Positions 5,813-33,505 of a stretch of 64,000 bases of DNA are shown here, piece by piece. How positions within the stretch are numbered: the stretch's first letter is position 1; every line of letters begins with the position of its first letter. The stretch is from positions 16,554,001-16,618,000 of the forward strand of contig OZ038378.1 in assembly GCA_964036045.1 (NCBI GenBank). The letters run 5' to 3'. The stretch comes from Eutreptiella sp. 'Long Island Sound 2002'. Lineage: Eukaryota > Protista > Euglenida. The notes under the pieces are model-generated. The model saw only the letters and a list, made by a program, of their open reading frames with translations, was not told the origin of the DNA and ran no database searches. A program made the translations under genes and the position numbers.

Positions 5813-5905
5813 AGCTGATAACACCGCGGGTAGTGGAGTGGTGCTTTGGACGTTTGCTTCGCGCATTGACAGTCGCCCAAGGCTGATGGAAACCCCAACC
5901 TTGGG

Positions 5906-6005
5906 GTTCTCACTTTCCGCTTTGTGTTGGACTCTTTGATTTTGTCCACCTAACTGGTCTCACTTTCCGCTTTGTATTGGACTCTTTGTATTGTCCACCT
6001 AAGTG
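5906..6005. repeat. Tandem duplication, 2 x ~50 bp
   Basis: TCTCACTTTCCGCTTTGT(G/A)TTGGACTCTTTG...TTGTCCACCTAA occurs twice, adjacent. Confidence 0.9.
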
Positions 6006-6368
6006 GCAAACATGGCAGACAACATGATTATGGCACATCGATGCCATCGGTGAGAATTCCGGAATAACATTTCAAGAACAACATCAAATTTATCAATTGC
6101 ATTGTTCTTTGCACTTGAACCTCCGTCATTGTAACTACGAAGCCAAGAGACATTCGCCAACTTGCTTCGGAATGCAGCCAAATCATGGTGGGTGTCTATT
6201 AGGTTGTTACACTGGCTACCTAGGGATTTTTTCCTCCTTTTTGGTGTAAATGGAAACTTTTTACCCTGAAAAACCCCGGGTTTCATGCCCCTTTCGTGCT
6301 GAAAACACGTTCACGGTAAAAAAGTCCCAAAGTTGGGTTCCCGGGCCTTGGCTCGCCCAAATTCACAA

Positions 6369-6425
6369 GTTGGCGCGCCAAGTCGCAAGTTGGCGTGCGC
6401 CAACTCCGGAGTTGGCGCGCCAAGT
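6369..6425. repeat. Palindromic GTTGGCGCGCCAAC-type array (3 units) at the 3' side of the CMC-like transposase
   Basis: gttggcgcgccaag / gttggcgtgcgccaac / gttggcgcgccaag at ~21-bp spacing. Confidence 0.85.
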
Positions 6426-6959
6426 GTCCCCCCACCGATCCAACCATTGCTTTGCACACTATTGTTGTCACTGGAAATTCCGTTCCTCACCTGCCCTTGC
6501 ACACATGGCAGGAAGAAAGCATTGTTCCATCTTTTTTTGTGGAATGTGCAAAAGAATGTGTAAAACAATGTGCAAGAGATGTGCTTCCCGATGATGAAAG
6601 TAGTATACATTGTGGAGCCGTAGCTCAAAATTGCCTTGCTGGGGGCCATGGAGGCATAGCAATCATATATAGAGGTCAGATGCCTTGCTGTGGTCCCACG
6701 GTCATCTAGCGGGTGGGTTGCCGGGAGAATGCCGGGCGGCACTGAATGCATCATTAGGTTAGGACCCCTGTTCGGCCTGGACGAAGACCCCCTTATTCTC
6801 TATGTACCCCCTTTGCTTCGTCCACGACGACTCCCAAACAGAAAAATTTTTATTATACAACCCCCACTCCAGATTATCTGAGCGGATCACTTCCCCCCAC
6901 CCCTTCCGCATGCGATCCCCCTTGCCCCCCTTCACCCGCACTCTGGCCCCCCGCAGTCT

Positions 6960-8600
6960 GGACACCCGGCCGCCTTTACTTCCACCTCTAAAGCTGCTCT
7001 TGGAAATTTCACATTTCAGGGCTTTGTGGCGCCCCTCTCCTTTGAAGGCGGCAAAAATACCAATGTGCCCCCACCTGCGGGCCCATCCCAACAGGTGGTC
7101 AATCCACAGAGGGGCCCTCAGGGTGACGTTCATTTCACAGGCCTTATGGGCCTCCCCCATTTTTTTCAATTCTGTTCGCAGAATTTTCATGTCGGGCAAC
7201 TACAATGGTCCCGATTTCCAGACGACATCGCTTGTTGCCAACAGCGATTTTCCCCATTGCCGCAAGGCGTCCGTCCAGGACACCTGGACCCCCCCCATGT
7301 CAACGACATGCTGCAGGAGGCCCTCCCCCTCCAGATGGTCACACATGGTGTCCCATCCCTCACTCTTCACCCACTCTGCAGCCGCCGTCTGCTCGATTTT
7401 CAGGGGCACCCCTTCTTATCCTTCCTCTCGTCTTCCAACGCCACACCGGTGGCGGTCCGTGCCTGGATCCGAATGGGATCCAAGAACCATTGCACCCACC
7501 TCACGGCCTTTCCCTTCTTCCACCGATGCACCGTGTGGAGGCTGTTCACGAGGGCTGAAAGCCCATTCTGCACTTGCCGGTGCGCGCCATGCAGCCCATA
7601 ATCGGGGGGCCGCTGCGGGGGGCGCACGATCGGGCATATCATCCCTCCCTACAGCCACTCCTCGACAATCACCCCCATCCCGCAACCAAATTCGTGCACG
7701 ATGGATGCCCGATTTTTCACACACAGCCAACAAACAGTGGCTGTGGGGTTTTTTGGCTGTGACCGAGGAGCAACCCCCCAAAATGACCTGCGCTTTGGTG
7801 TCTGCTATAAAAAAAGGAATCACACTACGCAGGTAGCCCCCTTTATCGGGGATTTGCTGCTGCGCCACCTCAATGAGGTCCGCGTTCAGGTCATAGACCT
7901 CGGCCAATTGGGAAATGATGGCCTTCTTCTCCGATCCGCGCAGCAAGATCCAAGAGCCCAAGGGCATTTGACTCCCCAGGTCTCCAATGGCAAAATGCAC
8001 GAAGGAGGCCTGCCAGAGCTTTGTCCCGTCGAAGGAGATGCCCACCCACACGTTGTCCGTCAGGAACGTGGGGCCGTCACGGTGCCACATCACCTGTGCC
8101 AGAAAACAGGGCGTGTGTAACGGGTCACCGTGAACGGTCGCCAGGAAACACTTTGGTGCAGGGTGGAAATACCTGCAGTTTCTGCCACAGATTGCATGCG
8201 GCCCCAAAAATGTCATTGTCCTCGTCCGTCTGAAAATGGACCTCCGTGACGCGGGGGGCGGACAATGCCTTTCGCATCTGCATCAGGGTTCCCCATGGGC
8301 ACTTCCATTGGCTGTGGGCCCGGCTGTACTGCAGTTTGCGGAAGTTGTCGCCATTTTTGCGGCTCTCCCACAGAATGGCTGCGGCCAACAGCTCCAAATC
8401 GGCGGTGGGGGGTTTGCGCTCCCCGCAAACGAGGTGGATGCGGCGGCGGCCGGGTTTGACGTGTACTTGCCAATGTGGCCACAGGATCTCCCCCACGGCT
8501 TCGCGAAGGCGCGCCAGCCGCGCGCGCCTGTCGCGGTAGTTCGATGGCGCCAGCTGCTCAAAGGCCCGCTGCATGGTGCACAAACAAAGACCTGCGGCAC
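6960..8600 (-). pseudogene. CMC/EnSpm (CACTA)-like DDE transposase, frameshifted
   Basis: Minus ORFs 8125-8583, 7416-8216, 7200-7409 and 6759-7199 carry VGISFDG (first D), FFIADTKAQ..LGGC.S....PH..C (second D plus Cys/His insert) and HLLGWARRWGHIGIFAAFKGEGRHKALK. The last matches the CACTA H..H.....GP.....F.FE....LK pattern around the catalytic E. Confidence 0.7.
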
Positions 8601-8639
8601 GTGAGGACGTGGCAGGCGGGTTGGATCATACAAGGGAAG

Positions 8640-8850
8640 GTTGGCGCACGTTGGCACACAGTTGGCACACAGTTGGCATGCAGTTGGCGCGCGCCAACTC
8701 AGGATTTGGCGCGCGCCAACTCGTCAGTTGGCGCGCGCCAAGTCCTGAGTTGGAGCGCGCCAGCTCGTCAGTTGGCGCGCGCCAAGTCCTGAGTTGGAGC
8801 GCGCCAGCTCGTCAGTTGGCGCGCGCCAAGTCCTGAGTTGGCGCGCCAAC
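8640..8850. repeat. Array of 8 GTTGGCGCGCGCCAAC-type palindromes, ~22-bp period with a 44-bp higher-order repeat
   Basis: Units start near 8683, 8705, 8727, 8750, 8771, 8794, 8815 and 8837, preceded by GTTGGCAC half-sites. Confidence 0.92.
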
Positions 8851-9200
8851 TTCTTCGCAGGAGTGCTCACAAGTCTCCATAAAAAATCGGAGAACTTGTC
8901 AGAACAAACCTTTGAAAATCTCCAATGCGACAAAGCCGACGACAGCTGCAAGCAATTGGTTACTTCAAATGCTTTTAAAGAACCATCGATTTGATGCGAT
9001 TATGGATTTTTTGAAGCCAATTAACGGCAATCAAAACACCGACCTAAAAGGTTGCAAGAGAAATGGTACAAAAGCCTTTTTGAACCTTATAAATTGATAT
9101 AAAAACATTTGTAAATCATGCAAAAGCTCATTTTATATCAATGTCATAGATTAGGAACATCCCATGCTGAAATGGATTTGTCGCTTTTAGGAAATTGCAT

Positions 9201-9274
9201 GGATGGCCTCCGGGAATCGAACCTAGGATTTTGCAATGCAAATCCCATGTTCCGCCAATTATGATAACACATCC
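9201..9274 (-). pseudogene. Degenerate tRNA-like sequence (isotype uncertain, possibly Cys-GCA with a 5-bp duplication)
   Basis: Minus strand GGATGTG...TAATTGG...GGGAT-TTGCA-TTGCAAA-ATCC...GGTTCGATTCCCGG...CATCC has a B-box and 5 of 7 acceptor-stem pairs. Confidence 0.5.
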
Positions 9275-10084
9275 GGCTGATAAATTTTCATCTCAATTAA
9301 TTATAGATCAACAGACAATATCGTCTGAATCCAGAAAACAGTAGGGATTGCAAGAATGTACGAAGTTGCTCATGCAATGGAGGGGTTTGTCGCATCTTGT
9401 CCGTCTTTTATCGCCGTTTGGGGTAGAATTTGTGGTGGCTTGCCGGTACAGCCTTGGTCACCATTATGGACTTGCCTTTTGTAGCCTTATGGATGTGAAT
9501 AGCTTTGCCGTTTGTAGCCTTTTGGGTGCACAATTTCGTACTTTTGCCAATATGGCCTTGCCCTTTCTTGCGGAGTTTCTCACTTGTAGTATGGGGTTTT
9601 GCCTTTTATTGAATGCGAACATGTTTGCCTTTTATAGCTCTTTGGACTTTGTTTTAAGACTCTTGTTGTTGATTCCTTTCGATCCTATGTGTGTTTGATG
9701 TCCATGTTCTCAACTCAAACCAGAGGCACAAGATCTTTGGTAATGCTCCCAATGATTGTTTGATTGGAAATCCACTCGGTTTTATGATAACGCGATCACG
9801 ATGAAAGTTGCAGAGCAAGGGCTGTTATGGTTTTCTGTTTCTTTGTTTTATCAAAATCCAAATCAAATTCCTCTACGGTATTCCCACTTCACGCGAGCAT
9901 CGGAAATCATAATCCACTCAGAATTCCAAAATGTAATTTCATCTTGTGCTCTGTAGATACAACAATGATAATAAAATTTAGAATACCTACAAAACACCAT
10001 TCTGTGGCCTATTTCTATCTGCACACTGATCTGTTCTACATCTGCGCACGCGCTACTATCCTAATCCCATTACACTCCCTTCCC

Positions 10085-10142
10085 AAGCTATTTGCTGGGG
10101 GTTACCCAGCAAATGGCTGCTTAACCAAAATAGACACTCAGA
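10085..10142 (-). ncRNA. Euglenoid spliced-leader-like sequence followed by a GT and a 13-bp hairpin (SL RNA relic or retroposed SL)
   Basis: Minus strand TCTGAGTGTCTATTTT (10127-10142) is 16 consecutive nt of the Euglena SL ACTTTCTGAGTGTCTATTTTTTTTCG. It is followed by G|GTTAAG and the hairpin GCTATTTGCTGGG/CCCAGCAAATGGC. Confidence 0.4.
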
Positions 10143-12119
10143 TATTTACAACGGGGGGGGGGGGGGTTGAGCCATTATACACAACCCAGCACAGGGCGTC
10201 AAACCAAAAAGTCAAACACACGCCCTACAAAATTTTACTGTGGTGTGCTGTAGTGCAGCAATGCACTGCAGCCCTGCATGCTAGTTAGGGTGGGAGTGGG
10301 GGTAGTTCTGCAGTGGTGAGGGGTGTAAACAAACAGAACACCCGAGTGCAGCAGCGGCCAAAACTGCCAAAAACCGTGAGATAGAGGGGGGGGGGCTGTC
10401 AAAAAATCTGTACTCGCCTGCCTGAAAAGGTTAGAATATTGTACAAAAATGCATCCCTGCCCTCCCTGCAGCATACACAGCAAGTGGAGTGTTTTGTTTC
10501 TTTCCTGTCATTCCGCAGTCTAGCACGACACCTGTATACTCTACAAATTCCATTAATCTGCACCTGATTAAAATTCCTCTTCAGCTCATGTCAAATTCGC
10601 TTTTCTCCACTTGCTGAGCCTGCAGAGGCAAAACAGAAACACTACATGCATATCATATAAAATAAAACGACGGCGTGTCCGATCGTCAACCATACCTGCC
10701 GCCTCCTCCAAACAAAGCTCCTGCATCCCAGTTCCGACCTCGTGTACTGCTGACTGCCTAAAAAGCAAGCACAGAGGTTACAAACTACACGCTATAAAAA
10801 CGCCACGACAACTATGCTAATGCACACGACGTGAAAAAACGCAAGCGGAAGCCTACTGAAACGCATCCTGAAATATTTTTATCATTGTATCCTGTTGTCA
10901 AACGCGTAACTGTATTTGTAAAATCTATAATAAAAACTAATCAAGCTGGACTGAGCAAACCTACGCCAACGCTTTGCCACACCTGGCGCACGCACAAATG
11001 CACACACGTACTTGCAAGAAAAAGCGAAAGACCAACACAGACAAAATGTTTTGAAATGTAAAAGAATTAAAGTAAGAAGTAAAAGTATACCGAAACACAA
11101 ACAACAAAGAAAACTCACAACTCACGGAGGGCTATGCAAGATGTGAGTCAGGCGCGGGCGCTCATCTCCTGCCTGCCAACCCAAAGCAAACATTACCTTA
11201 AGACCAAGCCCTGTGCATCCCACACCATGGCCAGGGGGCGGGGCGAAACAGTTAATTGGCTAAATTGATTCCGAACAGTATACCTAAAGCATGTTGGTCA
11301 AGCAAAAAGCTGTTGTAAGGGCAGTGCTTTTTGCAACAGTTGCCATGTTTAATGAAGAGCAGCATTCTTCTTCAACATGCCCCCTTTAATACGTGTTTAT
11401 CTTTTTCACGGTAGTTGCCTCCAAAGCCTTCGCACCTCTAGACGCTTGGACCTACACTCACTTTCTCCGGTGCTTCCAAAATACATGTGATAGCGGCCTT
11501 TTTGTCTTTCACGCTTATCACATGCACTTTGGTCTATTTGTCATTCAATTGTGGTTGCAACGAGAGCAAAAAGGTTTTCACTGCATGCATCTCTGAGATA
11601 GCAGAATGAATGTGGTTGGGGTACCGTTAGACCTCAACAGTGATCCGCTGCACACTGTGCAAATTAGTCAGTTTAAACTATTGACACCTATTCTCGCCAT
11701 GTAGCTGCGCAACCTCACAGCCAAGTTATAGGTGAACTCAACGAAACCGTAATTTTGACTTCTCTTATAGTGTTTTCGGAATGCATCTCTGCTAGTTTGA
11801 TGCCCACAATATGTTGGTTGTACATGATGCACATGAGCCTCTGTCCAACCTCCATGCCCCAAGCCAACCAAGGGATCATGGACCCACAACACCACGAACA
11901 CCACCACGCCACAAACCACCCCCACCAGGTCCTCCTCCACCACCACCACCCACCCTCTCACCCTACGCAACCCCAACTAACCGCCCCGTACCCCGAGGCG
12001 CCCATGCAGTACCAACGCCAAGGGGGGCTACAACAGCAGCCCTGCCGCAGTGCCTCTTCAAGAATACCACCAGCCCCCTCTCTGCAACCCGCCCCAGCGG
12101 GCTCCATTTTGACCATGCC

Positions 12120-12700
12120 AGTAGCGTAGTGCCTCATGTGCTGTTGTGTTAAGGGACTTCTGGTTCTTGTCGGGGTTTGTTGTAAGCTGCTTGTCATACC
12201 AGTTGTCGATCCACAAGACAACCCATTGCTGGTATATTTTGTCCCACGTTGTTTGCAACCTGGTTGTAGCCCTCTCTTTCACCCATGGCGTGTTGTATCG
12301 CGCGAAACCTGACGTGGCTAAAATGCGTCCTTGCGCCCTGCTCCTTTCGATAGCCACTACAGATTTGGGCTTCCATTGAGACGGAACTGCCCGATAGTGC
12401 ATCAACAAATAAAGGTACCAAGTCTCTTCCTGCAAAACGTCCACCCATCTCCTTCCCTCTAACACGATTGCATTTTGGACGCTGCAACGCTTTCATTCAT
12501 TTTTGCGTAGCCGCAGGAAAAAAGTAAACAGCAATCGCGCGCCCTCATCCCCTTGTTTTAGGCCTTCCCATAACTCTTCTGACGTGTGATACGGTGGTTT
12601 CACTGAGCACACATCGCGGAATATTCCAGATGCCGCTGCCACTGCTTTCTCGAGGTCCGACACCTTGCGTAGGGGCATTGTCACTGTAAGGAAAATTTGC
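12120..12700 (-). pseudogene. Truncated second copy of the unassigned DDE-like transposase
   Basis: YHTSEELWEGLKQGDEGARLLFTFFLRLR aligns with YTTAEHLWTAIEKNKCGAVFFFDFARLLR of copy 1. VLWIDNWYDKQLTTNPDKNQKSLNTTA...YWHGQ aligns with CVWIDNCYIK*YGTHPTIQDPSQNCTA...YFRGQ. Confidence 0.65.
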
Positions 12701-13029
12701 GCAGATGTACCTCCCTACATATTGCAATTATGAAAAATATTCTAGGAGTAATCATCTACCTGTCACACAATTCTCGCGCGACCACGTTTTGACGATTGGT
12801 TGGTCGCGTGCACCATTTTTTGTTCGCAGTAATTGTCACGCACTCCCACAGTGTGCTGGTAAATGCTACCTGCTTGTATCCAGTTGCGACGCGCTACCGA
12901 CGGTGTTGGGCACTAAAGTCAGCACCTTTAGGGCGGGCCATACAGCAGCGCCCCATCAAAGGGAATGTACATGCTGTTTAGTTGATGGATATGCTCATTT
13001 TTATTTATTCGCACGTTTGGAACCTTCAT

Positions 13030-13338
13030 TGCGCGAGGCCTCGCGCATTGGAGCTGGATAATTTATGGTTTGCGACACGCCATTCTATGCGCGAGGCCTC
13101 GCGCATCGAATGGCGGTTTCTTCAGTAACAACTATACATTTACAGATTACCTAGTGGAGTAAAATGAAAATATATGTATTGTTATATCCATTTCTACCAG
13201 TCCATTCTGATAAGGCTACACATCGTTACGTGTATGCCGACGGCATGTTTCTCCTTTCCCAGAACTTGAGTAATGTATCGTGTTGTAATACATTATTGTG
13301 ATACATGTTGTCCTATGCGCGAGGCCTGGCGCATAGGA
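13030..13338. repeat. Three copies of the palindrome (A)TGCGCGAGGCCTCGCGCA(T)
   Basis: 18-bp perfect palindrome at 13030-13047, a 38-bp near-perfect one at 13078-13115 and a ~27-bp one with one mismatch at 13312-13338. Confidence 0.9.
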
Positions 13339-14220
13339 TTGTCATAAAACAATAGTTTTTGAGAGAACGCTTGGTGTATCTGTCGCGTCAGTGAAATAAT
13401 TTATTTCTTGAGAATCATTTACGAGGTGGTACACCAATCTCTCAAAAGAATTATTATTTCCTTCCTTTCCGACCCTTTCCATTTTCAACATTTTCAGGTG
13501 TTTTGGACCCATGCAACTTGAGCCGCCTAAGAAGTTTGGTTCAAATACTAGTACAAAGCTCCACACCTCCGACGGATCATTGATTGAGGTGAAGCTATTG
13601 CTTTTTGTTCCGGGACACTGAAGGGTTTGACGCCTACGATTTTACACGGCAGGCAAAGGGTTGTGTCGCGTGGCAATTTCCGATCAATTATTTGCCATTT
13701 TGCGAACTATCTCGCGACCTCTTAGGTGTGAAAAAGTTGACATTTGGACAAGGGGTACGCCGATGAGATCATCAGGTCATAGGTAACTCTAAGTACATTG
13801 TAGGGTGGGTGGTGCAAGCACAATTTTTTGCTTTGTTCACTGAAGAGTATGGATAGATCTGCAATCATTAGTGGCACTTGGTTTTTTTTCCCGTTCCCGA
13901 TTTTGGCTGCCGTTAGATCTAGAGTTTTCAAGACTTTCACAAATGTGTTCTGTGTGTGCCATGCTTTGTGAAAGATGCTCAATCAATGACGGTTACAACG
14001 GGTACCACGAGGTACAAATTGTTTCAAGTCATTTTGAACAATAATATGCGCCATTATATTGAACACATTCCAATGTAGAATTGCATCCGGAGAAGACACC
14101 CTCTAGGGTGAGTTTTGTACCAAAATACAAACATTTTGTTAATGGTAAGATTTATGAAATATTGATCCAGCAGTGCACCTATTCTTAGAATGCCAAATGT
14201 GAATGAATGAATGTACGTTA

Positions 14221-14300
14221 GGAGCGCGCGCCAACTCCCCTGTTGGCGCACGCCAAATCAGGAGTTGGCGCGCCAACTTACCACTTGGCGCGTGCCAAAG
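14221..14300. repeat. GGCGCGCC palindromic array (4 units), same family as 6369 and 8640
   Basis: gcgcgcgccaac / gttggcgcacgccaaa / gttggcgcgccaac / cttggcgcgtgccaaa at ~21-22-bp spacing. Confidence 0.85.
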
Positions 14301-14323
14301 CCATGTCGACGCGTAGTGCCTGC

Positions 14324-15560
14324 TCATTTCCTCGACCGCTTGCTGCCCTGACTCCCCTCGCCCTCTTCCGCCCGCCTCCGCTTGGGGTCCAGCAGGTGCG
14401 CAACCGGGTGCTCGTCCAGCAGGCCCTTCAGCTCCGTGAGGGTGGTGTCTTTGACCCCCATGTTGAGGGCCACACGTCGTTGGGCGCTGAGTGCAGAGTG
14501 CAACTCAACCGCCGCGGCCTGCAGGTACAGCACATGGTCGGGGTCGGCGCCACCCTCTGCCCCCCCCCCAACTGCACGCACCTGCGCCGTGGCGGACAGC
14601 TGCTGCTGCAACTCCGCCCTCCGCTTTTCCCACCCCTTCTCCCGCCGCTTCCACGCGGCGCGCTCGCCGGTGAGCGCCTCCTGCGCCGTCTTGCGGGCGG
14701 CCTCCGCCGCCTTCAGCTGCTCGCGCAGCAGCTTGTTCTCCGCCTCCAGGCGGAGAATCTCCGCCTTCTCCCGTGCCCCCCCCCCCCCCCCGTCTCGCGC
14801 TGCTTGCGCTGACTGTGCTGCCTCCTGGGGGGTGGTCGTGGGGCGAGGGCGCCTAGAGCCCCTGGCCTGCTGCTCCGTGCGGCCCTTGCTCTGCAGGGAC
14901 GGGTCCCCAGACGCGTCGGATCCGGCCTTGCCCCCCTTCTCCCCCTTCGGCCCTTTCCCCAGGAGCTGCTTCTGGAAGCGGAGGAGAAACGCCTGCGCTG
15001 CCTCCTTCAAGTGGGGGGCAGGGGCAATGGCCCGCACGTCGCTCCACTCGCATTGCTTCCACCTCTGCAGCTGTCCCAGAGCGTCAATGCTGCAGAGGAG
15101 GAGCCGGTTGTGCGTGGAGGGGGGGTGCACCTGCACAACTGGCACAACTGAGGCAACCCATGGTTGCACCCCCGCCTTCCCCTGCACCACTGCCCAGAAC
15201 GGGCACTCCACCACCTTATTCGGTCCGGACCCCCGCCGAATCATCTGCGCCTGGAACAGGCGGCTGATCCTCGTCCCCCCCACATCGATGACGTCCACCG
15301 CCGTCGCCTCGGCGGACGTCACCTTCACGAACTTATCGGGGCCGGGCAAGTCGTCCCCGAAGTCTGCCGGTTCCGGGACCTCCGGAACTTCCCAATCCAC
15401 CTCCACCTCCACATCCACCTCCAACCCCTCCTGCTGCTCTTGCCGCTGCTCTTGCCGCTGCTCCTGCCGCTGCTCCTCCTGCCGCTCCGTTGCGGCCGGC
15501 ACGGGCACTGGACGCGGGTCCACTTCCAGTTGAAAATTGGCGTAGTGGATTGGGACCTGC
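14324..15560 (-). CDS. GC-rich hypothetical protein (~400 aa) with acidic QEQR repeats and a C-terminal coiled coil; start uncertain
   Basis: 441-aa open frame 14324-15649 with strong GC3 bias from ~15550 down and the coiled coil AEILRLEAENKLLREQLKAAEAARKTAQEAL. Confidence 0.65.
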
Positions 15561-16762
15561 AAATACACAACATCACAATGAACAAGCATTGAACAATGCA
15601 CACAACGACACCAATGCGACAACCAAGACAACACAAAAACCAGCCACACAGCAAGCTTTCCGATAAAACCAAACCAAGCGCCAAAACTGGACTTACCTGT
15701 CTATTTCTCCTTCTCATTTGCGGTGAAAATAGTCTATACAAATTTTTTGAACGGTTGTAACCACTCAGGCGAATCATGTACAGCCTACAGATTGGCCCAT
15801 TGCGAAAAAGCACAAATTGAGGCAGCACACCTAGAAACGATTGTTCGGGACCGCGTTTTCAACACGCCGTGGAGGTGTAAACCAGATGCTTCAAATCACC
15901 GTTGTGTGCCGATAATGCAATAACAATTGCTAGGTATGAAATCGGTCAAAACCAAGCGAGATTGCATTGGTTGTTCATTACAATAACACACTTTCCGGGT
16001 TGATTTAGCCCATATTGCAGGCAACGGGTAGCACAAGGAGTGTGGGACACAAGGCATCACAAAATCGGTATTTTCACAACAATCAAACGTTACCAATTTC
16101 CGGGCTGGGCGCCCATTGGTACGAAATGTGGAGCGTCTTTGTTTTTTATAGGCACGTGAACAACGAGTTTGGGAATGTTCATTCTCCTTGAAAACATGAT
16201 CTTTTCCTTGACGATGGCTCTTTTGTCGGACACCCAAAAGATGATGCAACTACCCACTTGGGCCCCTCTTGGCTGTTTCCTTGTTCTTACTGAGGTTTGT
16301 GTGCCATTGATGTAGTACCCATGGGATGGGACATCTAACAATGGGACAGATTACAAACTATGATTTGGGGTGGACCAACAATATTTCATGTCACCAACAC
16401 AATTGCTTCTCACCCCATGCATTCAAACGCAAACATCCAATAGTGAGCATTGTGAATGGTCCCACACAAAGGGTGCTTAAAGCATGTAGATTCGCCAATT
16501 GTTGCTATAATACATGTTGTAAAATACATAGCAATTGAAGACAGGTGTTCCTTAGAGAACACTGCGCGGAATCAAGCACTAAGCAACAGATCGTCATTGT
16601 AGACACGGAAATCGTTAATTTGCAATATATACACAAAACGCCCATGGTGTGTTGTGGCTTGCGACAGAAACAGTATTACATAAAGACGACCAGCGAGTTT
16701 TCCCTAAACAATCAGTATGTGATGATGTTGCGTAAAGCAACCAATCATTGCAAAACGAAACT

Positions 16763-17491
16763 TCACTTCCGACCAAAAAATTGGTCTAGAGTGCGTTGTT
16801 TGCAATCTGAGTCGCGTGATTGTTCGGGCATTCGTAAAGGTTGGTTGCAATTTTTTTTAGAATGCCACTGCGGGGTGCCGCCTTTGCTGATGTGTCTTTC
16901 TTTTCGTTGAGATTTGTGACTCTTCATGGCACGTTGTAGGCTCGTATGAGGCACCGCTTTTCGGGCTGCAAATGCAAAAATAGGAGCAATTTGCCGAGAC
17001 TGTTGGGACAAAGTGTCGTTGGCCTTGGGCGCGGAAGAGGACGAAGATGTTGCTTGGACGCTCGTTGATGCAGCTGAAACAGACAACCCATCAGCCAACA
17101 TATCTTCCCTTAAACGGGCCCAAGCACGCTCGTCGTCCTCATTCCAAGAATAGAAATTTCGGCTGGCATCCTCATATGCAGTCACCACGGGGGCGTACTC
17201 TGGGTGACTTTGCGCAAACATGTGTACTTTCTCAAGATCAAGCATAGACAACACGGGCAACATGGTGCAGACTCTACCATAAAACAAGGCGGAGAAGCCT
17301 GACATGACCTGACAAAGGACTATGGTCATATTCTGCCAATCTTTCACAAGTGGCACGGCATACAACACCATGGAAAACACCCTGGTTCCTACACGTAAGT
17401 GCACGAGGTTTTTCTTTCTGTGTGGTGATACGTTGCACCAGCACCGCCAAACTGCGTGGACGTAAAAAATCCCGGTGCAACTAACCAGCAT
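16763..17491 (-). CDS. Hypothetical protein ending in a canonical PIP box (QRTLDQFF)
   Basis: 242-aa ORF whose last residues are KQRTLDQFFGRK*, matching Qxx[LIM]xx[FY][FY]. An in-frame upstream segment lies past one TAG at 17507. Confidence 0.55.
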   Translation of the reverse strand: MLVSCTGIFYVHAVWRCWCNVSPHRKKNLVHLRVGTRVFSMVLYAVPLVKDWQNMTIVLCQVMSGFSALFYGRVCTMLPVLSMLDLEKVHMFAQSHPEYAPVVTAYEDASRNFYSWNEDDERAWARLREDMLADGLSVSAASTSVQATSSSSSAPKANDTLSQQSRQIAPIFAFAARKAVPHTSLQRAMKSHKSQRKERHISKGGTPQWHSKKNCNQPLRMPEQSRDSDCKQRTLDQFFGRK

Positions 17492-17666
17492 TTGCCTAAA
17501 TGAGTCCTAGCTGCTCCAATAGATTAGGCCACACAACAACAACATGCCCTTCGAGGGTGCACTGCGGGGTGCAACACGGCAATGTCGCTCACATTGCAAT
17601 GGCAAGGGTGCAGCGAAGTCCAATTCAGACCCCTTTGCCGGTTGGCAACCTTTAGTATGGTTTCTA

Positions 17667-18254
17667 TCATGGTGTATTGCCCACAACCTGACAGCCACGC
17701 AACACATCGATGTATGTTGCCCCATCGTGAAAGTACAACCATGTGGCGTCGCCTACGTACATGATTTTGCCAACACCCTTCAAAATGGGCTGCAAATCTT
17801 GCGGTGTAAGGACCACAGGGAAAATCATGGGTTTCAGCGGTGCGGCCGCCTTGGCATTAGGAACTTTGGCAATAGCGTCCAGTGTGTCCAATGGATTTTC
17901 GAACATGACCTTGGCCCCCGCTTGGGCGTCTACGGCCATGTAGTACGGTTTTAGGTCGGTGCCAATGACTGTTGCGAGCTCAATGTACGACTTCACGGTT
18001 GCCACCAAGATCTCCGGGGCAGGAAGGTTGACAACCATGTATGAAGTGGAAGGACTTGGCTTTTCTTCCAAGGAGGCCAAAAAAGCCTCACAATCGCCAT
18101 CAGACACATCATCGTCGATCTTATGCTCCGTTGCCGACTTGTAATAGAAGCGGCGTGCAACTTTAATGCGGTCTTCAGGCTTGGCTTGATTAAGCAACTC
18201 TTTCAAACCCACCCGTAACTTGTCTGTCACCTTGTTATCCAGTACGGCCGCCAT
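17667..18254 (-). CDS. Hypothetical globular protein (~195 aa), unknown function
   Basis: Open frame of 213 aa (likely start MAAVLDNK) with protein-like composition and marked GC3 codon bias. Confidence 0.65.
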   Translation of the reverse strand: MAAVLDNKVTDKLRVGLKELLNQAKPEDRIKVARRFYYKSATEHKIDDDVSDGDCEAFLASLEEKPSPSTSYMVVNLPAPEILVATVKSYIELATVIGTDLKPYYMAVDAQAGAKVMFENPLDTLDAIAKVPNAKAAAPLKPMIFPVVLTPQDLQPILKGVGKIMYVGDATWLYFHDGATYIDVLRGCQVVGNTP

Positions 18255-18374
18255 CTTCGCAGTGCAGAACGCCTTTTCAACATTGATGGGTGTTGGCTGG
18301 CCTTGCACGGTGTATGTCCATTTGCTCGTTTCTGCCCGTTGCCTTTTATCCGAATCCTCTTGGACTGTGGCAGG

Positions 18375-18806
18375 CTAACTTTCTGCGCTTTTGCCCGAAC
18401 TTTTCTCAACGGCATCTGGTACTTTTCTTTTCAGAGACCCAGAGCGAGTTTTCAACGGGGTCAATGTCATGTTGGGATCTACCCAAAGAAAGAAGTCGCA
18501 CGCTTTGCACGAGTCGAATGAACGACCAGCATTCTTCGTGTTTGTGCACGAGTGTACTTCTGGCACCTCTCCGCAGTCACACCGTGGCTGACCATTTGCC
18601 CCTTTGCCACTTGGGTGAATGATTGCCCAAGATTTGAAGCACTTGTCTTGTTTTTCCGGACATGAGCGCGTCAAACACCCGTAGTTTGCTTTGCTTGAGC
18701 AATATCGCACCTCAAATTTGTTGCCACACTTGCAGGTTTGCTTGATCCAGTATGCTTTGGCAGCGGCTGCACTATCGAATTCGATCTCAATATTGGAAGC
18801 CGACAT
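18375..18806 (-). CDS. Tandem GRF-type zinc-finger protein
   Basis: PRCDCGEVPEVHSCTNTKNAGRSFDSCKACDFFLWVD fits the GRF consensus CxC...N.GR.F..C...C.FF.W. An upstream degenerate finger reads CKCG...NYG..TRSCP....CFKSW. Confidence 0.75.
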   Translation of the reverse strand: MSASNIEIEFDSAAAAKAYWIKQTCKCGNKFEVRYCSSKANYGCLTRSCPEKQDKCFKSWAIIHPSGKGANGQPRCDCGEVPEVHSCTNTKNAGRSFDSCKACDFFLWVDPNMTLTPLKTRSGSLKRKVPDAVEKSSGKSAES

Positions 18807-19035
18807 GTCAACAGCAACAATGATTCGACGTTTAGCAGACGTGGTGCAACCTGGTTAGTTCATTGCAACATCAATCATGCAGCACACGTGATTCTTAGGA
18901 TGTCTCGTGAGCAGTGGTGTCAACCAACATATAGTATTGGGGCAAAACAATTGGAAAGTTGTTGCTCTGCCTTTTCATGTCAATGCCACCCGCACATCCA
19001 ATGGGCACTTTTTCTGGCTACCAAACCTTTGACGC

Positions 19036-19428
19036 CTAGAGTTCATCATTTTGTGCTTTTTGTTTTTGCTTTACGGGAAATCTGAAGTTTAAACAAACCT
19101 TTTTTGGCTTATCTTGGACCCAACACATAACGCGTGTAACCCAACCGTAAAACGTACGTTGTACGTACTCAACACCACATTGCAATGCCAAAACGGGGCG
19201 TTGAATGGTGATGATCACTTTGTTGGGGCCGGTAACGTAGTCCAATGAATTTCCTTTTTTCGGCATAAGGCTGCGCAATGTTGTGGATTGCTTTTGTGCT
19301 ATTGCAGGCGATTTTTGCTTTACATGCTTGTTGCGTGTCATGCCCGTCTTATAGGAGGTTTCCATCTCGCGTTCACCCCTACCACCAGAAGGCGGAGGTA
19401 ACTTCCACGAGATTTCCCAACCCCCCAA
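19036..19428 (-). CDS. Small basic hypothetical protein
   Basis: 130-aa ORF co-oriented with its neighbours; no recognised motif. Confidence 0.35.
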   Translation of the reverse strand: MGGWEISWKLPPPSGGRGEREMETSYKTGMTRNKHVKQKSPAIAQKQSTTLRSLMPKKGNSLDYVTGPNKVIITIQRPVLALQCGVEYVQRTFYGWVTRVMCWVQDKPKKVCLNFRFPVKQKQKAQNDEL

Positions 19429-19777
19429 GCGGTTTGGCTCTTACCCACGAAGGGCAACCCCGGTCAAAGGGCACATGACAACCCACCTTGGCGGAAGGAT
19501 CACCAATTTCCAGGCTGGGCCGCCCATGGAAATCGGAGCTGGGCCAAAGCCACACTCGACCATCCAAGGCCGCACTGTGCTGCATTTGATACTATTGCAC
19601 CCCCTTCACATTTGTGCTTTTCCATGTGATGTGAGCAATACTTTGGGTCCCAGAAAAATGCCAACAAAGGCCCATGGTGTTGTGAAGTAGACACATTATC
19701 CAAATAAAGTAGACAAACCGGCATTGCAACCAAAGATGCACGCAAAATGGGCCGATAGTGACACGATGGGGTGTCAA

Positions 19778-20419
19778 TTACAAATGCATGTTGTAATTCG
19801 TTGTATATAAGATTGCACGCAGCTGCTCGAATAGGCAAGAGTCCGAGTCTTTGAAGACACTCATTGGCAAAATGTACACAATGCGACAGCTACGACAACC
19901 ACGGTCAAATGCTTCAAGTGGTAAACGGGATACGGCATTGTCGCAGGACGTGTGCTTTGTCACCACAACAACGATATCATCCTCAGGGTAAAACATGCCC
20001 TCTACTGATGCACGACTACAAATATAAAACGTGTTATGGAATAAGTTTATGCGGCGCAACCAACGGGGTTTCATTTCTATCGTACAATAAATAGGAACCA
20101 CCAATTTTTTGCATCGACACATGGGTTCACTAAGTGCCATGGACACCACCAATCCCAGAAACATGGATGGCGGAAATTGCATACTCGAGTATTCGCGGGT
20201 ATGATAAAACTCCAAAAATTGCACTGGAAACAACATTCGTCGAGACAAACAATTGAAGATATTTATTGTGAACCTATGGTAGCAATGGACACGCAAATTT
20301 GCATTGGAAAAGAAACGATGCCAAAAACACAGCATTAGTGCCTCTAGAGGTGAAAGAAAACACAGTATTATTTCAATTGTGTCATAGCAAATGCTGCTTA
20401 ATGAGCGACACGTTGACAT
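19778..20419 (-). CDS. F-box-like protein (~213 aa)
   Basis: N-terminal LSSICYDTIEIILCFLSPLEALMLCFWHRFF resembles the F-box pattern L..LP.E....I..+L....L..+....R.+. The reading frame is uninterrupted. Confidence 0.55.
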   Translation of the reverse strand: MSTCRSLSSICYDTIEIILCFLSPLEALMLCFWHRFFSNANLRVHCYHRFTINIFNCLSRRMLFPVQFLEFYHTREYSSMQFPPSMFLGLVVSMALSEPMCRCKKLVVPIYCTIEMKPRWLRRINLFHNTFYICSRASVEGMFYPEDDIVVVVTKHTSCDNAVSRLPLEAFDRGCRSCRIVYILPMSVFKDSDSCLFEQLRAILYTTNYNMHL

Positions 20420-21445
20420 TGTTTGAAGAGACACTAAACCGAATAGACGAAAGCACGGTACAATGGTGCAACACCATGGCACGGGAATCAATTCAGGTTG
20501 CTATGATGAGGGCCTATATTGCTGGTCAATGTGCTGCAATTCTTTTCTTTTGATCAGGAATGACTTATTGAGGTGTAGATCTGTGGGGCATATATTTCAA
20601 CCCGTGACAAACAAATAAAGGCGGTTGTTGCATGAAACTGTTATGCATCCGTCACATGGAAATCGTTTTCAGGCTTGAGGCATTCCAACAACAGTTGTAA
20701 AATGAATAAATAATCCCCGTATGCCGGATGATCTTGATAGGCATTCGGATCACACCAGTTCGGAAGGCCGGATAATCGGGCAGCCGATGCACTCACCGCC
20801 GAAATCTACAACACAATTGATGTGGGGGGATAGTACGTAGGATCACATATTGCATGGAACAAATGTGCTATGTTTACGCGCGGTTATATCCGTGGTTTTT
20901 CATGGTGTTGGTCGGACCTACTTAGGTGTGTTTTTAGGAACGTGTCGTCACAAAAAAACTTTGCGTTAACGTACCGAGTAATGACATCACCTCATACCTC
21001 ATAGGTCCCTTGAAGTTTTTGTGCCCTCAATGCATTGGCTTCGGCCACGACGACATCAGCAAAAACCAAAAAGAGAAAGAACATTTTTCCAAGTTACTGC
21101 AGAAAAAAAGCAAAAAATTGTGCGACAAAATTCCGCTTGCGAAATCTCATAGGTTCAACCTGTCAAGGTGAATGTCGACACCGAAGGCTTGTCATTGCTG
21201 ATTGTAGAGTGGCTTTCCTTTTTACAGGCATGTGAACAAAGAGTGCTGGAATGTTCGCTTTATTTGAAAACAATGTACTATAGTTTTTGGCGACTCAGAT
21301 GGGCTTCTCCTGACTATTTCCTGGTTCCTAGAAAGGTCTATGCCCCATCAATAAAATACCCAATGGGATTGGACATTTAAGAACGGGATGAATGGTACGC
21401 AAAAGAAAAAACCCTCCGACACGGCAAAAGACACACGTACCCATA

Positions 21446-21830
21446 TGATCGCTCCGTTGTACTCAAAATGTACTGCAAGGTAACCAACCTCCATTTTGCA
21501 ATCCTCAACCCACCCGCGGCTCAGTGTCCTCTTCAAGGAGCCGCATGCCACTGGCTATAGTGGTTGGTGATCTGGAACGTTGGCCTTGTGTCATATGTTG
21601 GGTCCACTTCAAGTTGATGATTTAGAATCTTTCATCACCCTTTCCTCTCACCAAGTGATTTGCAATTTATCGTCGAGCAATTAGGCACGGGAAAAGCTCT
21701 CTTCCGAACACAATGCGATGTTGAAGAGGCAAGTGTGAAACGTAGAGTATGGGAGAGGGGTGTAGGTTGAGGATTGCAAAATGGAGGTTGGTTACCGTGC
21801 AGTACATTCTGAGTACAACATAGCAATCAC
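21446..21830. mobile_element. MITE-like element with ~55-65-bp terminal inverted repeats
   Basis: GTTGTACTCAAAATGTACTGCAAGGTAACCAACCTCCATTTTGCAATCCTCAACC (21456-21510) is the near-perfect reverse complement of 21766-21820. Confidence 0.65.
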
Positions 21831-21911
21831 GTGGCTATCATCATCAGACTCATCATATCCATCGTCCTCTCTCAGCTGTTTCATCTGCCTGCTCAGCTTT
21901 TTGACAGCTGC

Positions 21912-24241: not shown

Positions 24242-24538
24242 GTGGTAGTGGTAGCGGTAGTGGTGGTGCTAGTGGTAGTGCTAGTGGTAGCGGTAGTGTA
24301 GTAGTGGTAGTGTAGTAGTGGTAGTGGTAGCAGTGGTAGTAGTGGTGGTAGTGGTAGTAGTGGTAGTGGTGGTAGTGGTGGTAGTAGTGGTAGTAGTGGT
24401 AGTAGTGGTAGTAGTGGTAGTAGTAGTAGTAGTGGTAGTAGTGTTAGTAGTGGTAGCAGTGGTAGTAATGGTAGTAGTGGTAGTAGTGGTAGTAGTGGTA
24501 GTAGTGATAGTAGTGGTAGTAGTGGTAGTAGTGGTAGA
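24242..24538. repeat. (GTA/GTG)n compound trinucleotide microsatellite
   Basis: Direct reading; it gives spurious poly-Val/poly-Thr ORFs. Confidence 0.95.
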
Positions 24539-26089
24539 GGTGAGACAGAGGTCAGAGGTAACGTGACGAATTCACGGCGTCACCCCACCCGCCCCCTACA
24601 CTGTTGACTCCACTGTTTTGTGTGCCACATGTTCACTTTGATTTTCTTCATCTTCTTGTGCTTGCCCCCACCCGAGATGGTGGCCCTAACAGCAAGCATG
24701 GTGCCGGGCGCCTGGGTGTACTTGTGCATGTCAGCCTCAACAAACCAACCCCCACCTTGGTCCGAGGGTGGCTGCAGAAAAAGCTGTGGGACATGTCCCG
24801 CACTGTGACCGCCACTTGGCCCCACGGAGCTTGCTCTGACTCAAGCCGTGTTACCGGCAACACCGCACCCAGCGGTGGCCCATATCTGGCGTAGGGTGTC
24901 GAACTCCCACTCATCCAACGACATGTAGCCACGGGGATCACTCGACACACCCACACGTAGCACGTTCCATTTTGACAACTCCCCTTCACTTAGACATTTT
25001 GTCTACCAACGATAGGAGCGGACACCATCCTTGTCTTCTTGCCGGTGCTTCTTCATCCAAATGCAGCATGCCCGCCGGAAGACGTATTTCAGCAACTGCC
25101 ACTCAGGTGTGTCCGGTGCCAAAGTGGTGGTTGGGTTGCAGATGTCGTGGGCAACCACTTCCTCCTTCAACGGGAACTCTTTGCCAAGGTGTTGAGCGGG
25201 AGGCGATGCTTGCGGTGCTGACGCGTCCGGTGGACTAGCGGCTCGTCCGGTCCCCAGTGCCCTTAGGCAGTCCTGCACGGCCTTCCCCTAAGAGTCCTTG
25301 TCCATGATACACAGGGACCTGTGCGAGTCAGGGGTGAAACCCTGAGGAAGGCGGGTAAACCACAAGGATGAAATGCCTGAACCGCGGTTGGAACACAGTT
25401 GAACTACACACCTCCTAATTGTCCACTTCCAATTGAGCGTGCACTACCTCCTCATCTTCGCATCGCCGCCGGCCGTGCCATCAAGGGATCTCTTTGTAGA
25501 GGAAGGTGCGCTCGTGTGCGTGTTGCAGCATCGCCTCATCCTTTTCTCCTTCGTAGCCCGACGACCACCCCCACGGGAACTTGTGGTGAGACACAGTTAA
25601 GTGACTCAACAATGTCACCACAGAACATGGCCTTGCCCCATGGCTGCAAGTTCCCCAAAACAGTGGGCGCTTCCGTCCGGAGCCAAAGCTGGTAGGCTGT
25701 TCACATTATCGATGGTTTGAGTGTCACCCTCACTATGGGGAATCCGCACTTGGTAGACAGAATCCAAATGGACTTCACCCTCGGAGGAACATGAGACTTT
25801 TGGGGGTGGCTTGCTTCATATCCCACCAGCATTTCTTGCCATCTAAATTGGCGTTGTAGGGTCACATCTTTTTGTTGATGCAAGACATGGAATGTTACAA
25901 TTGCACGTCGCATTTTTGTGGCACAATTCATTTTTTTTGCCATAAATGTCGAAACCGCTTGATAGCGCCACTAGGGATTTGGAGTTATGCGTACAACCCG
26001 TCCATGTCACAACGCGTACTTGTGCACAATGTTGTTTTTCAACACAAGAAAAGAAGATGTCTTGCACCTTTGGTACGTTGTTGTCCAAG

Positions 26090-33322: not shown

Positions 33323-33505
33323 GTGGTAGTAGTGGTACTAGTGGTAGTAGTGGTAGTAGTACTAGTCCTGGTAGTAGTGGCTATAGCGGAAGTAGTGGTG
33401 GTAGTGGTAGTAGTGGTAGTAGTGGTAGTAGTGGTAGCAGTGGTAGTAGTGGTAGTAGTGGTAGTAGTGGTAGTAGTTGTAGTAGTGGTAGTAGTCGTGG
33501 TAGCG
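33323..33505. repeat. (GTA/GTG)n microsatellite
   Basis: Direct reading. Confidence 0.95.

What the first reader, a model, noticed from the sequence alone, without database searches (positions are those of the whole stretch)
13340..20500. Compact co-oriented intron-free gene cassette: possible giant-transposon cargo or endogenous virus
Seen: at least six minus-strand ORFs (F-box-like, small basic, GRF x2, unknown, PIP-box, coiled-coil, plus decayed ORFs at 13.3-14.1 and 15.9-16.3 kb) packed with short spacers. There are no microsatellites and no evident introns, unlike the host gene at 50-58 kb. The cassette ends in the same GGCGCGCC array that flanks the CMC transposase and sits directly upstream of a WIDN transposase. 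Knowledge: F-box, GRF-finger and PCNA-binding proteins are typical accessory genes of large DNA viruses and cargo-carrying transposons. Inference: a large mobile unit carrying host-manipulation functions (ubiquitin ligase adaptor, replication-clamp binder, nucleic-acid binder). No capsid, polB or packaging ATPase gene was recognised. This is the best candidate for an undescribed system in the window.
Basis: partly seen in the sequence, partly recalled or inferred. Interest (0 to 1): 0.8.

Follow-up and report, generated by a model that had tools for sequence, protein, structure and literature searches.

The report
Truncated Helitron with accessory genes
The "gene cassette" is the front half of a dead copy of a rolling-circle transposon (a Helitron) joined to pieces of other repeats, not a virus; the family carries a zinc-finger accessory gene that I found described nowhere, which is of modest interest.

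Summary
The ORFs exist, but the cassette as drawn (13340-20500) joins three unrelated pieces.

- **Helitron fragment:** window 15695-21741 (minus strand) is 6.05 kb of a roughly 12.7 kb Helitron. It is 92-97% identical to copies on other contigs of the same assembly. In those copies the same genes are followed by a 1,670-1,830 aa RepHel protein (Helraiser, E=7.5e-271) and by a hairpin+CTAG 3' end.
- **State of the window copy:** it is cut off about 250 bp before RepHel and has no 3' end.
- **Other ORFs:** the "PIP-box" ORF (242 aa) and the "F-box-like" ORF (237 aa) are intact. No F-box is detectable. The "small basic" ORF is probably not a gene.
- **Coiled-coil ORF and GGCGCGCC array:** both belong to another high-copy repeat, which is itself split by a 5.4 kb insert holding the 13.3-14.1 kb "decayed ORFs".
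- **No viral signal:** no virus hallmark and no viral relative was found.
- **What is new:** the GRF-finger gene keeps its place upstream of RepHel in a second, ~50% diverged subfamily, and has no relative outside this assembly.

Verdict: a new variant of a known kind, of modest interest.

The parts
15695..21741 (-). 5' half (6,047 bp, GC 46%) of a Helitron copy. It lacks RepHel and the 3' end.
   Evidence: It is 96.9% identical over its whole length to L001:7066-13111 and 92-95% identical to L002, L004, L005 and L006. All five stop matching the window at 15695-15697 and then run on into RepHel. tblastn of RepHel against the whole window finds only a weak paralogous hit in ORF242. No 3'-end signal occurs in the window.
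21435..21741 (-). 5' terminal segment of the element. The outer boundary is at 21741.
   Evidence: The same boundary, with unrelated flanks, is found in the window, L001:7066 and L001:4400. L001:~3315 has it too, two bases shorter. L001:3315-3638, L002, L006 and L012 join this segment directly to the sequence at window 19574.
19575..21434 (-). Optional 1.86 kb module that carries ORF237.
   Evidence: It is present in the window, the main L001 copy and part of L002. It is absent from four other copies, which join 21435-type sequence to 19574-type sequence.
19778..20491 (-). Function unknown.
   Evidence: It is uninterrupted in the window, L001 and L002, with dN/dS 0.35-0.48. Its 90% cluster has 7 members. 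There is no Pfam, PDB or PHROGs hit.
19036..19428 (-). Probably not a gene.
   Evidence: It is a singleton at 90% identity. It is interrupted in L001 and only partly present in the other copies.
17667..18806 (-). GRF379 gene: two GRF-type zinc ribbons plus a family-specific C-terminal domain of about 200 aa. In the window it is broken by one premature stop and no frameshift.
   Evidence: Both window ORFs sit in one 27-member cluster whose intact members are 379 aa. The window stretch has the same length as L001's gene, no indel and one in-frame stop. Pfam Zn_ribbon_GRF scores 23.5 bits. dN/dS is 0.35-0.63. A diverged copy lies upstream of a diverged RepHel in L009.
16763..17491 (-). ORF242, intact, ending in a PIP-box-like motif. 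Its middle part is paralogous to residues 99-163 of RepHel.
   Evidence: It is uninterrupted in the window, L001, L002 and L006. It is broken in L004 (3 stops) and L005 (1 stop). The paralogy has E=6e-6. dN/dS is 0.46-1.19.
15695..16762 (-). Spacer that in sister copies leads to the RepHel start.
   Evidence: It is shared with all sister copies. Only a 55-aa ORF is called here, with 2 cluster members.
14224..15694 (-). Truncated piece of an unrelated high-copy repeat ('repeat B', GC 66%). It holds the 441-aa coiled-coil ORF (14324-15649) and part of the palindromic 22-bp array (14224-14302).
   Evidence: It is 92% identical to L007:9885-11370 and 88% to L008:10204-11666. There are 37 related protein clusters, all from the same assembly. 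The join to the Helitron at 15694|15695 is clean.
8853..14223 (.).
   Evidence: Window 14224-15694 and 7170-8762 are contiguous in L008. The ORFs inside the insert are singletons. The arrays lie on both sides.
6130..8852 (-).
   Evidence: It is collinear with L007 and L008. The 149-aa ORF at 8125-8574 has 97 cluster members. There are no Pfam hits.
21753..21837 (+). Inverted copy of an inner part of the 5' segment (21438-21522), lying just outside the element.
   Evidence: The 85-nt arms are 85% complementary. The same piece occurs in L001:3556-3635.

Best explanation
**What it is.** Window 15695-21741 (minus strand) is the 5' half of one copy of a canonical (Helraiser-like, HLE1) Helitron family. 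The family is present in dozens of copies in this unidentified eukaryote.

**Order in fuller sister copies:**
1. 5' segment
2. optional ORF237 module
3. GRF379
4. ORF242
5. RepHel (HUH nuclease plus PIF1 helicase)
6. about 0.9 kb of spacer
7. GC-rich hairpin plus CTAG 3' end
8. a tandem array of 3'-end units

**State of the window copy.** It is cut about 250 bp before the RepHel start. It is joined cleanly to a truncated copy of an unrelated repeat, which supplies the 441-aa ORF and the GGCGCGCC array. With no RepHel and no 3' end, and with GRF379 stopped once, this copy is an immobile remnant.

**How the family works.** The rolling-circle mechanism is established for Helraiser and is not shown here: RepHel nicks the 5' end, unwinds one strand and ends at the hairpin/CTAG signal.

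**Inferred roles of the accessory genes:**
- GRF379 handles the single-stranded intermediate. GRF fingers bind ssDNA. This would be the role proposed for the RPA-like genes of plant Helitrons.
- ORF242 tethers the complex to the host sliding clamp through its PIP-like tail.
- The role of ORF237 is unknown.
For: **Copies and limits**
- The window is 92-97% identical to five loci on other contigs, all ending at window 15695-15697.
- The 5' boundary at 21741 is shared by four copies with unrelated flanks.

**Helitron identity of sister copies**
- Pfam gives Helitron_like_N at 1e-53 and PIF1 at 7e-63.
- The PDB entry for Helraiser, 7lcc, matches at E=7.5e-271 over residues 33-1494 of 1496.
- The HUH motif is kept in 10-11 of 12 aligned relatives, the tyrosine pair four residues apart is invariant, and the GKT loop is kept in 11 of 12.
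- A 9-10 bp hairpin (-13.4 kcal/mol, z=-4.3), then 7-8 nt, then CTAG, then T occurs in L002, L006, L011 and L012.
- There are at least 66 RepHel members in two clusters.

**GRF379 as a resident gene**
- It is an intact 379-codon ORF in five copies, with all 13 pairwise dN/dS values between 0.35 and 0.63.
- In L009, a version at 41-58% amino-acid identity lies in the same order and strand upstream of a RepHel at 42-66% identity.
- All eight relatives found among 1.84 billion representatives come from this genome. The three traced to contigs lie in this assembly and the other five match only proteins of its clusters.

**Function leads**
- Zf-GRF binds ssDNA but not dsDNA, and also binds PCNA (PMC5861430).
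- The PIP consensus and PIP boxes in pogo, Tigger and LINE-1 ORF2p are described in PMC5371812.
- The tail of ORF242 fits that consensus and is conserved.

**Other units**
- Repeat B and its insert are shown.
Against: - The window copy has neither RepHel nor a 3' end. Its assignment rests on DNA identity to copies that have them.
- The canonical 5'-TC start and the A|T target could not be shown at the 5' boundary.
- The GRF score is below Pfam's cut-off.
- Structure models are poor (pLDDT 34 and 56), and the fold search gave nothing significant.
- ORF242 and ORF237 were not found in the older subfamily.
- dN/dS of ORF242 reaches 0.92-1.19 in two pairs.
- There are no expression data, and the host is unidentified.
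Confidence: 0.87

Rival explanations
1. The accessory ORFs (GRF379, ORF242, ORF237) are passively captured host gene fragments with no role for the element, as in many gene-capturing Helitrons.
For: - Helitrons capture genes repeatedly (PMC11417382).
- The ORF237 module is optional.
- ORF242 has dN/dS near 1 in two pairs and is absent from the older subfamily.
- RepHel copies without GRF379 exist, for example L012.
Against: - GRF379 keeps its place upstream of RepHel, and 41-58% amino-acid identity, in a subfamily whose RepHel has diverged to 42-66%. A neutral passenger would no longer be alignable at that distance.
- Every GRF379 pair has dN/dS below 1.
- No relative turned up outside this assembly among 1.84 billion representatives. 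One diverged locus, L010, has no RepHel within 10 kb, so a donor gene in this genome is not excluded.
- ORF242 derives in part from RepHel itself.
Confidence: 0.2
2. The Helitron 5' half and the repeat B piece form a new composite mobile unit, for example one made by end bypass or template switching, so that the 441-aa ORF really is cargo.
For: - The join at 15694|15695 is clean.
- All ORFs lie on the same strand.
- Helitrons are known to pick up downstream DNA (PMC11417382).
Against: - None of the 11 other loci shows this junction.
- No hairpin/CTAG end occurs anywhere in the window.
- Both partners are truncated, and repeat B continues with a 5.4 kb insert and its own remainder.
Confidence: 0.05
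3. The region is an endogenous large DNA virus, a Polinton or giant-transposon cargo.
For: It has compact, co-oriented ORFs without recognisable relatives.
Against: - Sister copies carry a Helitron RepHel and a Helitron 3' end.
- No capsid, polB, packaging ATPase or integrase domain was found in any ORF tested.
- There is no relative in IMG/VR or PHROGs.
- The whole element is about 12.7 kb.
Confidence: 0.02
4. The ORFs are exons of ordinary single-copy host genes.
For: A GT...AG-like stretch lies next to the 441-aa ORF at the junction.
Against: - GRF379 has 27+1 cluster members on many contigs. ORF237 has 7. The 441-aa ORF has 37 related clusters.
- The intron-like stretch spans the join of two unrelated repeats.
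Confidence: 0.02

Closest known systems
Helraiser / Helibat and other canonical Helitrons (HLE1)
   Same: - RepHel of the sister copies aligns over nearly the whole of Helraiser (E=7.5e-271), with the HUH motif, the tyrosine pair and the PIF1 helicase.
- The 3' end has a GC-rich hairpin, a short spacer, CTAG and then T.
- The family is multi-copy with many truncated derivatives.
   Different: - The nearest outside RepHel proteins are only 38-43% identical.
- RepHel has a long N-terminal extension with 17-aa repeats.
- Three extra genes lie upstream of RepHel.
- No clean 5'-TC was found.
- Long tandem arrays of 3'-end units follow the element.
- The window copy lacks RepHel and the 3' end.
Plant Helitrons with an RPA-like single-strand-binding gene (e.g. 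the Mothra family, PMC4683698) and the 20 accessory domains listed by HELIANO (PMC11417382)
   Same: They carry a separate ORF, next to RepHel, that is predicted to bind single-stranded DNA and holds a fixed position in the family.
   Different: - The domain here is a pair of GRF zinc ribbons plus an unknown C-terminal domain, not OB folds.
- GRF is not among the domains named in the HELIANO text.
- No paper in the library holds both 'Helitron' and 'zf-GRF', 'GRF zinc finger' or 'GRF-type'.
- RPA lies downstream of RepHel in HLE1, whereas GRF379 lies upstream.
APE2 (AP endonuclease 2): PIP box plus Zf-GRF
   Same: It combines a PIP box with a GRF finger that binds ssDNA and PCNA (PMC5861430).
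   Different: - Here the two features sit on two neighbouring genes.
- There is no nuclease domain.
- There is no detectable sequence relationship beyond the finger pattern. A PDB search with GRF379 returned no GRF structure.
PIP boxes of pogo/Tigger transposases and LINE-1 ORF2p (PMC5371812)
   Same: These are mobile-element proteins with a motif that fits the PCNA-interacting consensus.
   Different: Here the motif closes a small separate protein rather than the transposase. Binding is untested.

Membership tests
Helitron (canonical, HLE1) | RepHel protein with an HUH Rep nuclease and a PIF1-type helicase: family level (sister copies) | tested here: met
   L002:13109-18601 gives Helitron_like_N at 1e-53 and PIF1 at 7e-63, and Helraiser 7lcc at E=7.5e-271. 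The HUH motif, the invariant tyrosine pair and the GKT loop are present.
Helitron (canonical, HLE1) | RepHel present in the copy in the window | tested here: not met
   tblastn of RepHel against all 64 kb finds only a weak paralogous hit in ORF242. The window copy is a remnant without RepHel, not an autonomous element.
Helitron (canonical, HLE1) | 3' end with a hairpin about 10 nt before CTRR | tested here: met
   This is met in sister copies only. A 9-10 bp GC hairpin, 7-8 nt and CTAG occur in L002, L006, L011 and L012. The signal is absent from the window.
Helitron (canonical, HLE1) | 5' end starting with TC | tested here: inconclusive
   Four copies share the boundary at window 21741, but the shared sequence does not start with TC. 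A TC lies three bases inside.
Helitron (canonical, HLE1) | Insertion between A and T without target-site duplication | tested here: inconclusive
   CTAG is followed by T in 20 of the 25 matches listed, but inside tandem arrays. The 5' flanks end in A in three of four copies. No empty site was available.
GRF zinc finger (Pfam PF06839 / PF23549) | Profile match above the curated cut-off; four-cysteine ribbon with the GR.F and FF.W signatures | tested here: inconclusive
   The score is 23.5 bits against a cut-off of 25.9. Both signatures are present in finger 2, and the cysteines are kept in 4-5 of 5 diverged pieces at most positions.
PIP-box (PCNA-interacting) proteins | Motif Qxx[ILM]xxF[FY]; binding to PCNA | tested here: met
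   The motif is met at the C-terminus of ORF242 and is conserved. Binding to PCNA is not testable with these tools.
F-box proteins | F-box domain profile match | tested here: not met
   ORF237 has no Pfam family at E<=1 and no PDB hit.
Endogenous large DNA virus / Polinton | Capsid, polB or protein-primed polymerase, packaging ATPase, integrase | tested here: not met
   None was found in any ORF tested. GRF379 has no relative in IMG/VR, and PHROGs gave no hit.
CMC (CACTA/Mirage/Chapaev) transposon, for repeat B | DDE transposase domain; terminal inverted repeats with subterminal repeat arrays | tested here: inconclusive
   No Pfam domain was found in any ORF of the window copy or of the fuller copies L007 and L008. 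Palindromic 22-bp arrays exist, but the ends were not defined.

The most novel reading that the evidence does not exclude
GRF379 and ORF242 together form a self-encoded module of this Helitron lineage that handles single-stranded DNA and tethers it to PCNA. It would be a split counterpart of the Zf-GRF plus PIP-box pair of APE2. It would take the place of the RPA-like gene of plant Helitrons and link rolling-circle transposition directly to the host sliding clamp.
Probability: 0.25. Interest if true: 0.55.

Novelty: new variant of a known kind. Interest (0 to 1): 0.3.

Why it matters
For the scan, a candidate 'undescribed system' turns out to be a truncated Helitron stuck to other repeats. It needs no further virus hunt.

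For transposon biology, the family adds a new kind of accessory gene to Helitrons: a double GRF-finger protein with an unknown conserved domain. It has been kept next to RepHel across two deeply diverged subfamilies. Next to it lies a small protein ending in a PIP-box-like motif.

If these proteins do bind single-stranded DNA and PCNA, they would show how a rolling-circle transposon recruits host replication. That part of the Helitron mechanism is still poorly known.

Tried and rejected
**Searches that gave nothing**
- Pfam on all cassette ORFs gave only a sub-threshold GRF hit.
- PHROGs gave nothing.
- PDB sequence searches with ORF237 and ORF242 gave nothing. With GRF379 they gave only chance matches of the cysteine-rich stretch to small three-finger toxins at E>=0.01, which I disregard.
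- Rfam found nothing in the window.
- The word-based protein search with GRF379 returned only its own family.
- IMG/VR returned nothing.

**Structure**
- AlphaFold2 gave pLDDT 34 for GRF379 alone. For the C-terminal domain with 8 sequences it gave pLDDT 56.
- Foldseek against the PDB gave no match at E<=0.001. It showed only weak RRM-like and LINE-1 ORF1p-like resemblances, with TM about 0.2 on the query, which I treat as a lead only.

**Ends of the element**
- The tandem arrays run off every locus, so the outer 3' limit was not found. The 5'-TC was not found either.
- I tested whether the repeat at window 5855-6129, which lies next to Helitron 5' ends in L001, is the Helitron's 3' part. It is not present after RepHel in any locus.

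**Host**
- Twenty-nine further window ORFs have no significant Pfam domain, and the assembly accession appears in no paper. The organism stays unknown.

**Reading rejected**
- An intron-like GT...AG stretch next to the 441-aa ORF spans the join of two unrelated repeats.

Full report
**1. What is in the window**

- 237 aa (19778-20491)
- 130 aa (19036-19428)
- a GRF-finger ORF and the next 'unknown' ORF (together 17667-18806)
- 242 aa (16763-17491)
- 441 aa (14324-15649)

Pfam recognises only a sub-threshold GRF zinc ribbon. Simple repeats in this stretch are limited to coding low-complexity runs inside the 441-aa ORF. An array of palindromic 22-bp units around GGCGCGCC lies at 14224-14302. It recurs at 8659-8868 and 6343-6420.

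Nothing suggests a human contig.

**2. Copies elsewhere and the true limits**

An exact look-up put the GRF ORF and the 'unknown' ORF into one 27-member protein cluster. Its intact members are 379 aa. All members come from one ENA assembly (ERZ25074135) of long eukaryotic contigs. The window matches contig ctg10866_36x_l of that assembly apart from one 1-nt gap.

I fetched eleven other loci. The comparison showed the following:
- Window 15695-21741 is 96.9% identical over its whole 6.05 kb to L001.
- It is 92-95% identical to L002, L004, L005 and L006.
- All five stop matching the window at 15695-15697.
- The other boundary, 21741, is shared with unrelated flanks by four copies.

**3. The family is a Helitron**

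In L002 the 242-aa gene is followed by an uninterrupted 1,830-aa protein. The evidence for RepHel is:
- Pfam gives Helitron_like_N (1e-53) and PIF1 (7e-63).
- It aligns with nearly all of the solved Helraiser transposase (7lcc, E=7.5e-271).
- Against eleven relatives, the HUH motif is kept in 10-11 of 12, a tyrosine pair four residues apart is invariant, and the GKT loop is kept in 11 of 12.

About 0.9 kb after the stop codon comes the canonical 3' signal: a 9-10 bp GC-rich hairpin (-13.4 kcal/mol, z=-4.3), then 7-8 nt, CTAG and a T. It is found in L002, L006, L011 and L012.

This unit is then repeated in tandem many times, with 14 matches in L011. The arrays run off the loci.

Two RepHel clusters of 36 and 30 members exist in this assembly. 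The nearest outside relatives, from plants, animals and fungi, are 38-43% identical.

From the 5' boundary to the first 3' signal, a full element measures about 12.7 kb.

The window has no RepHel and no 3' signal. It holds the 5' 48% only.

**4. The genes of the fragment**

*GRF379*
- It is one gene of 379 codons. In the window it has the full length, no indel and one premature stop.
- It is intact in five sister copies, with dN/dS 0.35-0.63 in all 13 pairs.
- Its N-terminal 135 residues hold two GRF-type ribbons. Their cysteines are kept in diverged copies.
- Its C-terminal ~200 residues are a domain with no known relative.
- A full HMMER search of 1.84 billion representatives found eight proteins. 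The three I traced to contigs lie in this assembly. The other five match only proteins of its clusters. The set includes a subfamily at about 45% identity.
- In L009, a GRF379 at 41-58% identity lies on the same strand upstream of a RepHel at 42-66% identity. This co-divergence in conserved order is the best evidence that GRF379 is a resident gene of the element and not a recent passenger.

*ORF242*
- It is intact in the window and in three sister copies. It is broken in two others, by three stops and by one stop.
- It ends in a motif that fits the PIP-box consensus of PMC5371812. By shuffling, the motif is expected in 0.46% of cases anywhere in the protein and in 0.012% within the last 15 residues.
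- Its middle part is paralogous to residues 99-163 of RepHel.
- Its dN/dS is 0.46-1.19, and it was not found in the old subfamily.

*ORF237*
- It is intact in all three copies that have it, with dN/dS 0.35-0.48.
- It lies on an optional 1.86 kb module that four other copies lack.
- It shows no F-box.

*ORF130*
- It is a singleton, interrupted in L001 and only partly present in the other copies. It is probably not a gene.

**5. The rest of the 'cassette'**
- The 441-aa ORF has 37 related clusters in the same assembly.
- Window 14224-15694 and window 6130-8852 are collinear with L007 and L008. In L008 the two parts adjoin across the palindromic array.
- So one copy of a second repeat ('repeat B') is split in its array by a 5.4 kb low-copy insert (8853-14223). 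That insert holds the 13.3-14.1 kb 'decayed ORFs'.
- Repeat B has no recognisable domain, so 'CMC transposase' is unconfirmed.
- The ORFs upstream of the Helitron (21.9-23.0 kb) are singletons without domains, so 'WIDN transposase' is unconfirmed.
- At 15694|15695, the Helitron, cut about 250 bp before RepHel, meets repeat B, cut in the last unit of its array, without filler.
- Both partners are truncated, and no other locus shows this join. I read it as a rearrangement, not a mobile composite.

**6. How it most likely works**

Shown here:
- the anatomy of the family;
- the catalytic motifs of RepHel;
- the 3' signal;
- the conservation of GRF379.

Established elsewhere, for Helraiser: RepHel nicks, unwinds and transfers one strand, and ends at the hairpin/CTRR signal.

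Inferred:
- GRF379 binds the single-stranded intermediate. Zf-GRF of APE2 binds ssDNA, not dsDNA, and also binds PCNA (PMC5861430).
- ORF242 brings in the sliding clamp through its PIP-like tail.
- Together they would do what RPA-like genes are thought to do in plant Helitrons (PMC4683698, PMC11417382).

The window copy itself can do none of this.

**7. Comparison and novelty**

By RepHel and the 3' end, the family is a canonical Helitron. The 5'-TC and the A|T target remain unshown.

Accessory genes are known in Helitrons. HELIANO lists 20 such domains. GRF is not named there, and no paper in the library links Helitrons with GRF fingers. The supplementary table of that paper was not available.

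I therefore rate this as a new variant of a known kind. The remnant in the window is ordinary.

**8. Limits and slips**
- The host is unidentified.
- There are no expression data.
- The structure models are poor.
- Second possible slip: a script printed 20-residue tails of ORF242 copies, one of which showed a stop mark.

Noticed in passing
L011:15900-25040, L012:16639-21155, L002:19462-21347: Long tandem arrays follow RepHel. Their units each end in the Helitron 3' signal (hairpin + CTAG). The basic units are 180-204 bp, with higher-order periods of about 650-1,530 bp. This looks like a satellite built from Helitron ends.
   Followed up: partly
L002:~8200-8275: A run of TTAGGG-type telomere-like repeats lies inside a contig, at a junction between Helitron pieces.
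   Followed up: no
window 6343-6420, 8659-8868, 14224-14302; L007 and L008: Repeat B carries several arrays of a 22-bp unit built around a palindrome containing GGCGCGCC. The family is high-copy: 97 cluster members for its 149-aa ORF. No ORF has a known domain.
   Followed up: partly
window 13027-13339: Three copies of a palindrome of about 20 nt lie inside the 5.4 kb low-copy insert.
   Followed up: no
L010:9442-14483: Five GRF379-like pieces lie within about 5 kb. Four are GRF-finger pieces at 34-49% identity to GRF379, three of them forward at about 1.3-1.6 kb spacing and one reversed. The fifth is a piece of the C-terminal domain (31%). No RepHel lies within 10 kb. This may be an old decayed cluster or a donor-like gene.
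   Followed up: no
window 5855-6129; L001:3007-3281 and 4153-4241: A 275-bp repeat abuts repeat B in the window. In L001 it lies 33 bp and about 160 bp upstream of two Helitron 5' ends, each time followed by a small hairpin. Its relation to the Helitron is unclear.
   Followed up: partly
L002:13904-14349 and the same region of L001, L005 and L006: A 51-bp (17-aa) tandem repeat lies in the N-terminal part of RepHel. Its copy number differs among copies, which probably accounts for part of the differences in RepHel length (1,671-1,830 aa).
   Followed up: no
window 24243-24615 and 33251-33500: Two arrays of the same 9-bp tandem repeat lie 8.8 kb apart.
   Followed up: no
window 34950-35249 and 37206-37505: A pair of 300-nt direct repeats, 98% identical, lies 2.26 kb apart. 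They could be the ends of a small LTR-type element.
   Followed up: no
window 7667-28307 versus L003: The stored contig and the window differ by a single 1-nt gap over 20.6 kb, so the window comes from a slightly different version of the same contig.
   Followed up: yes
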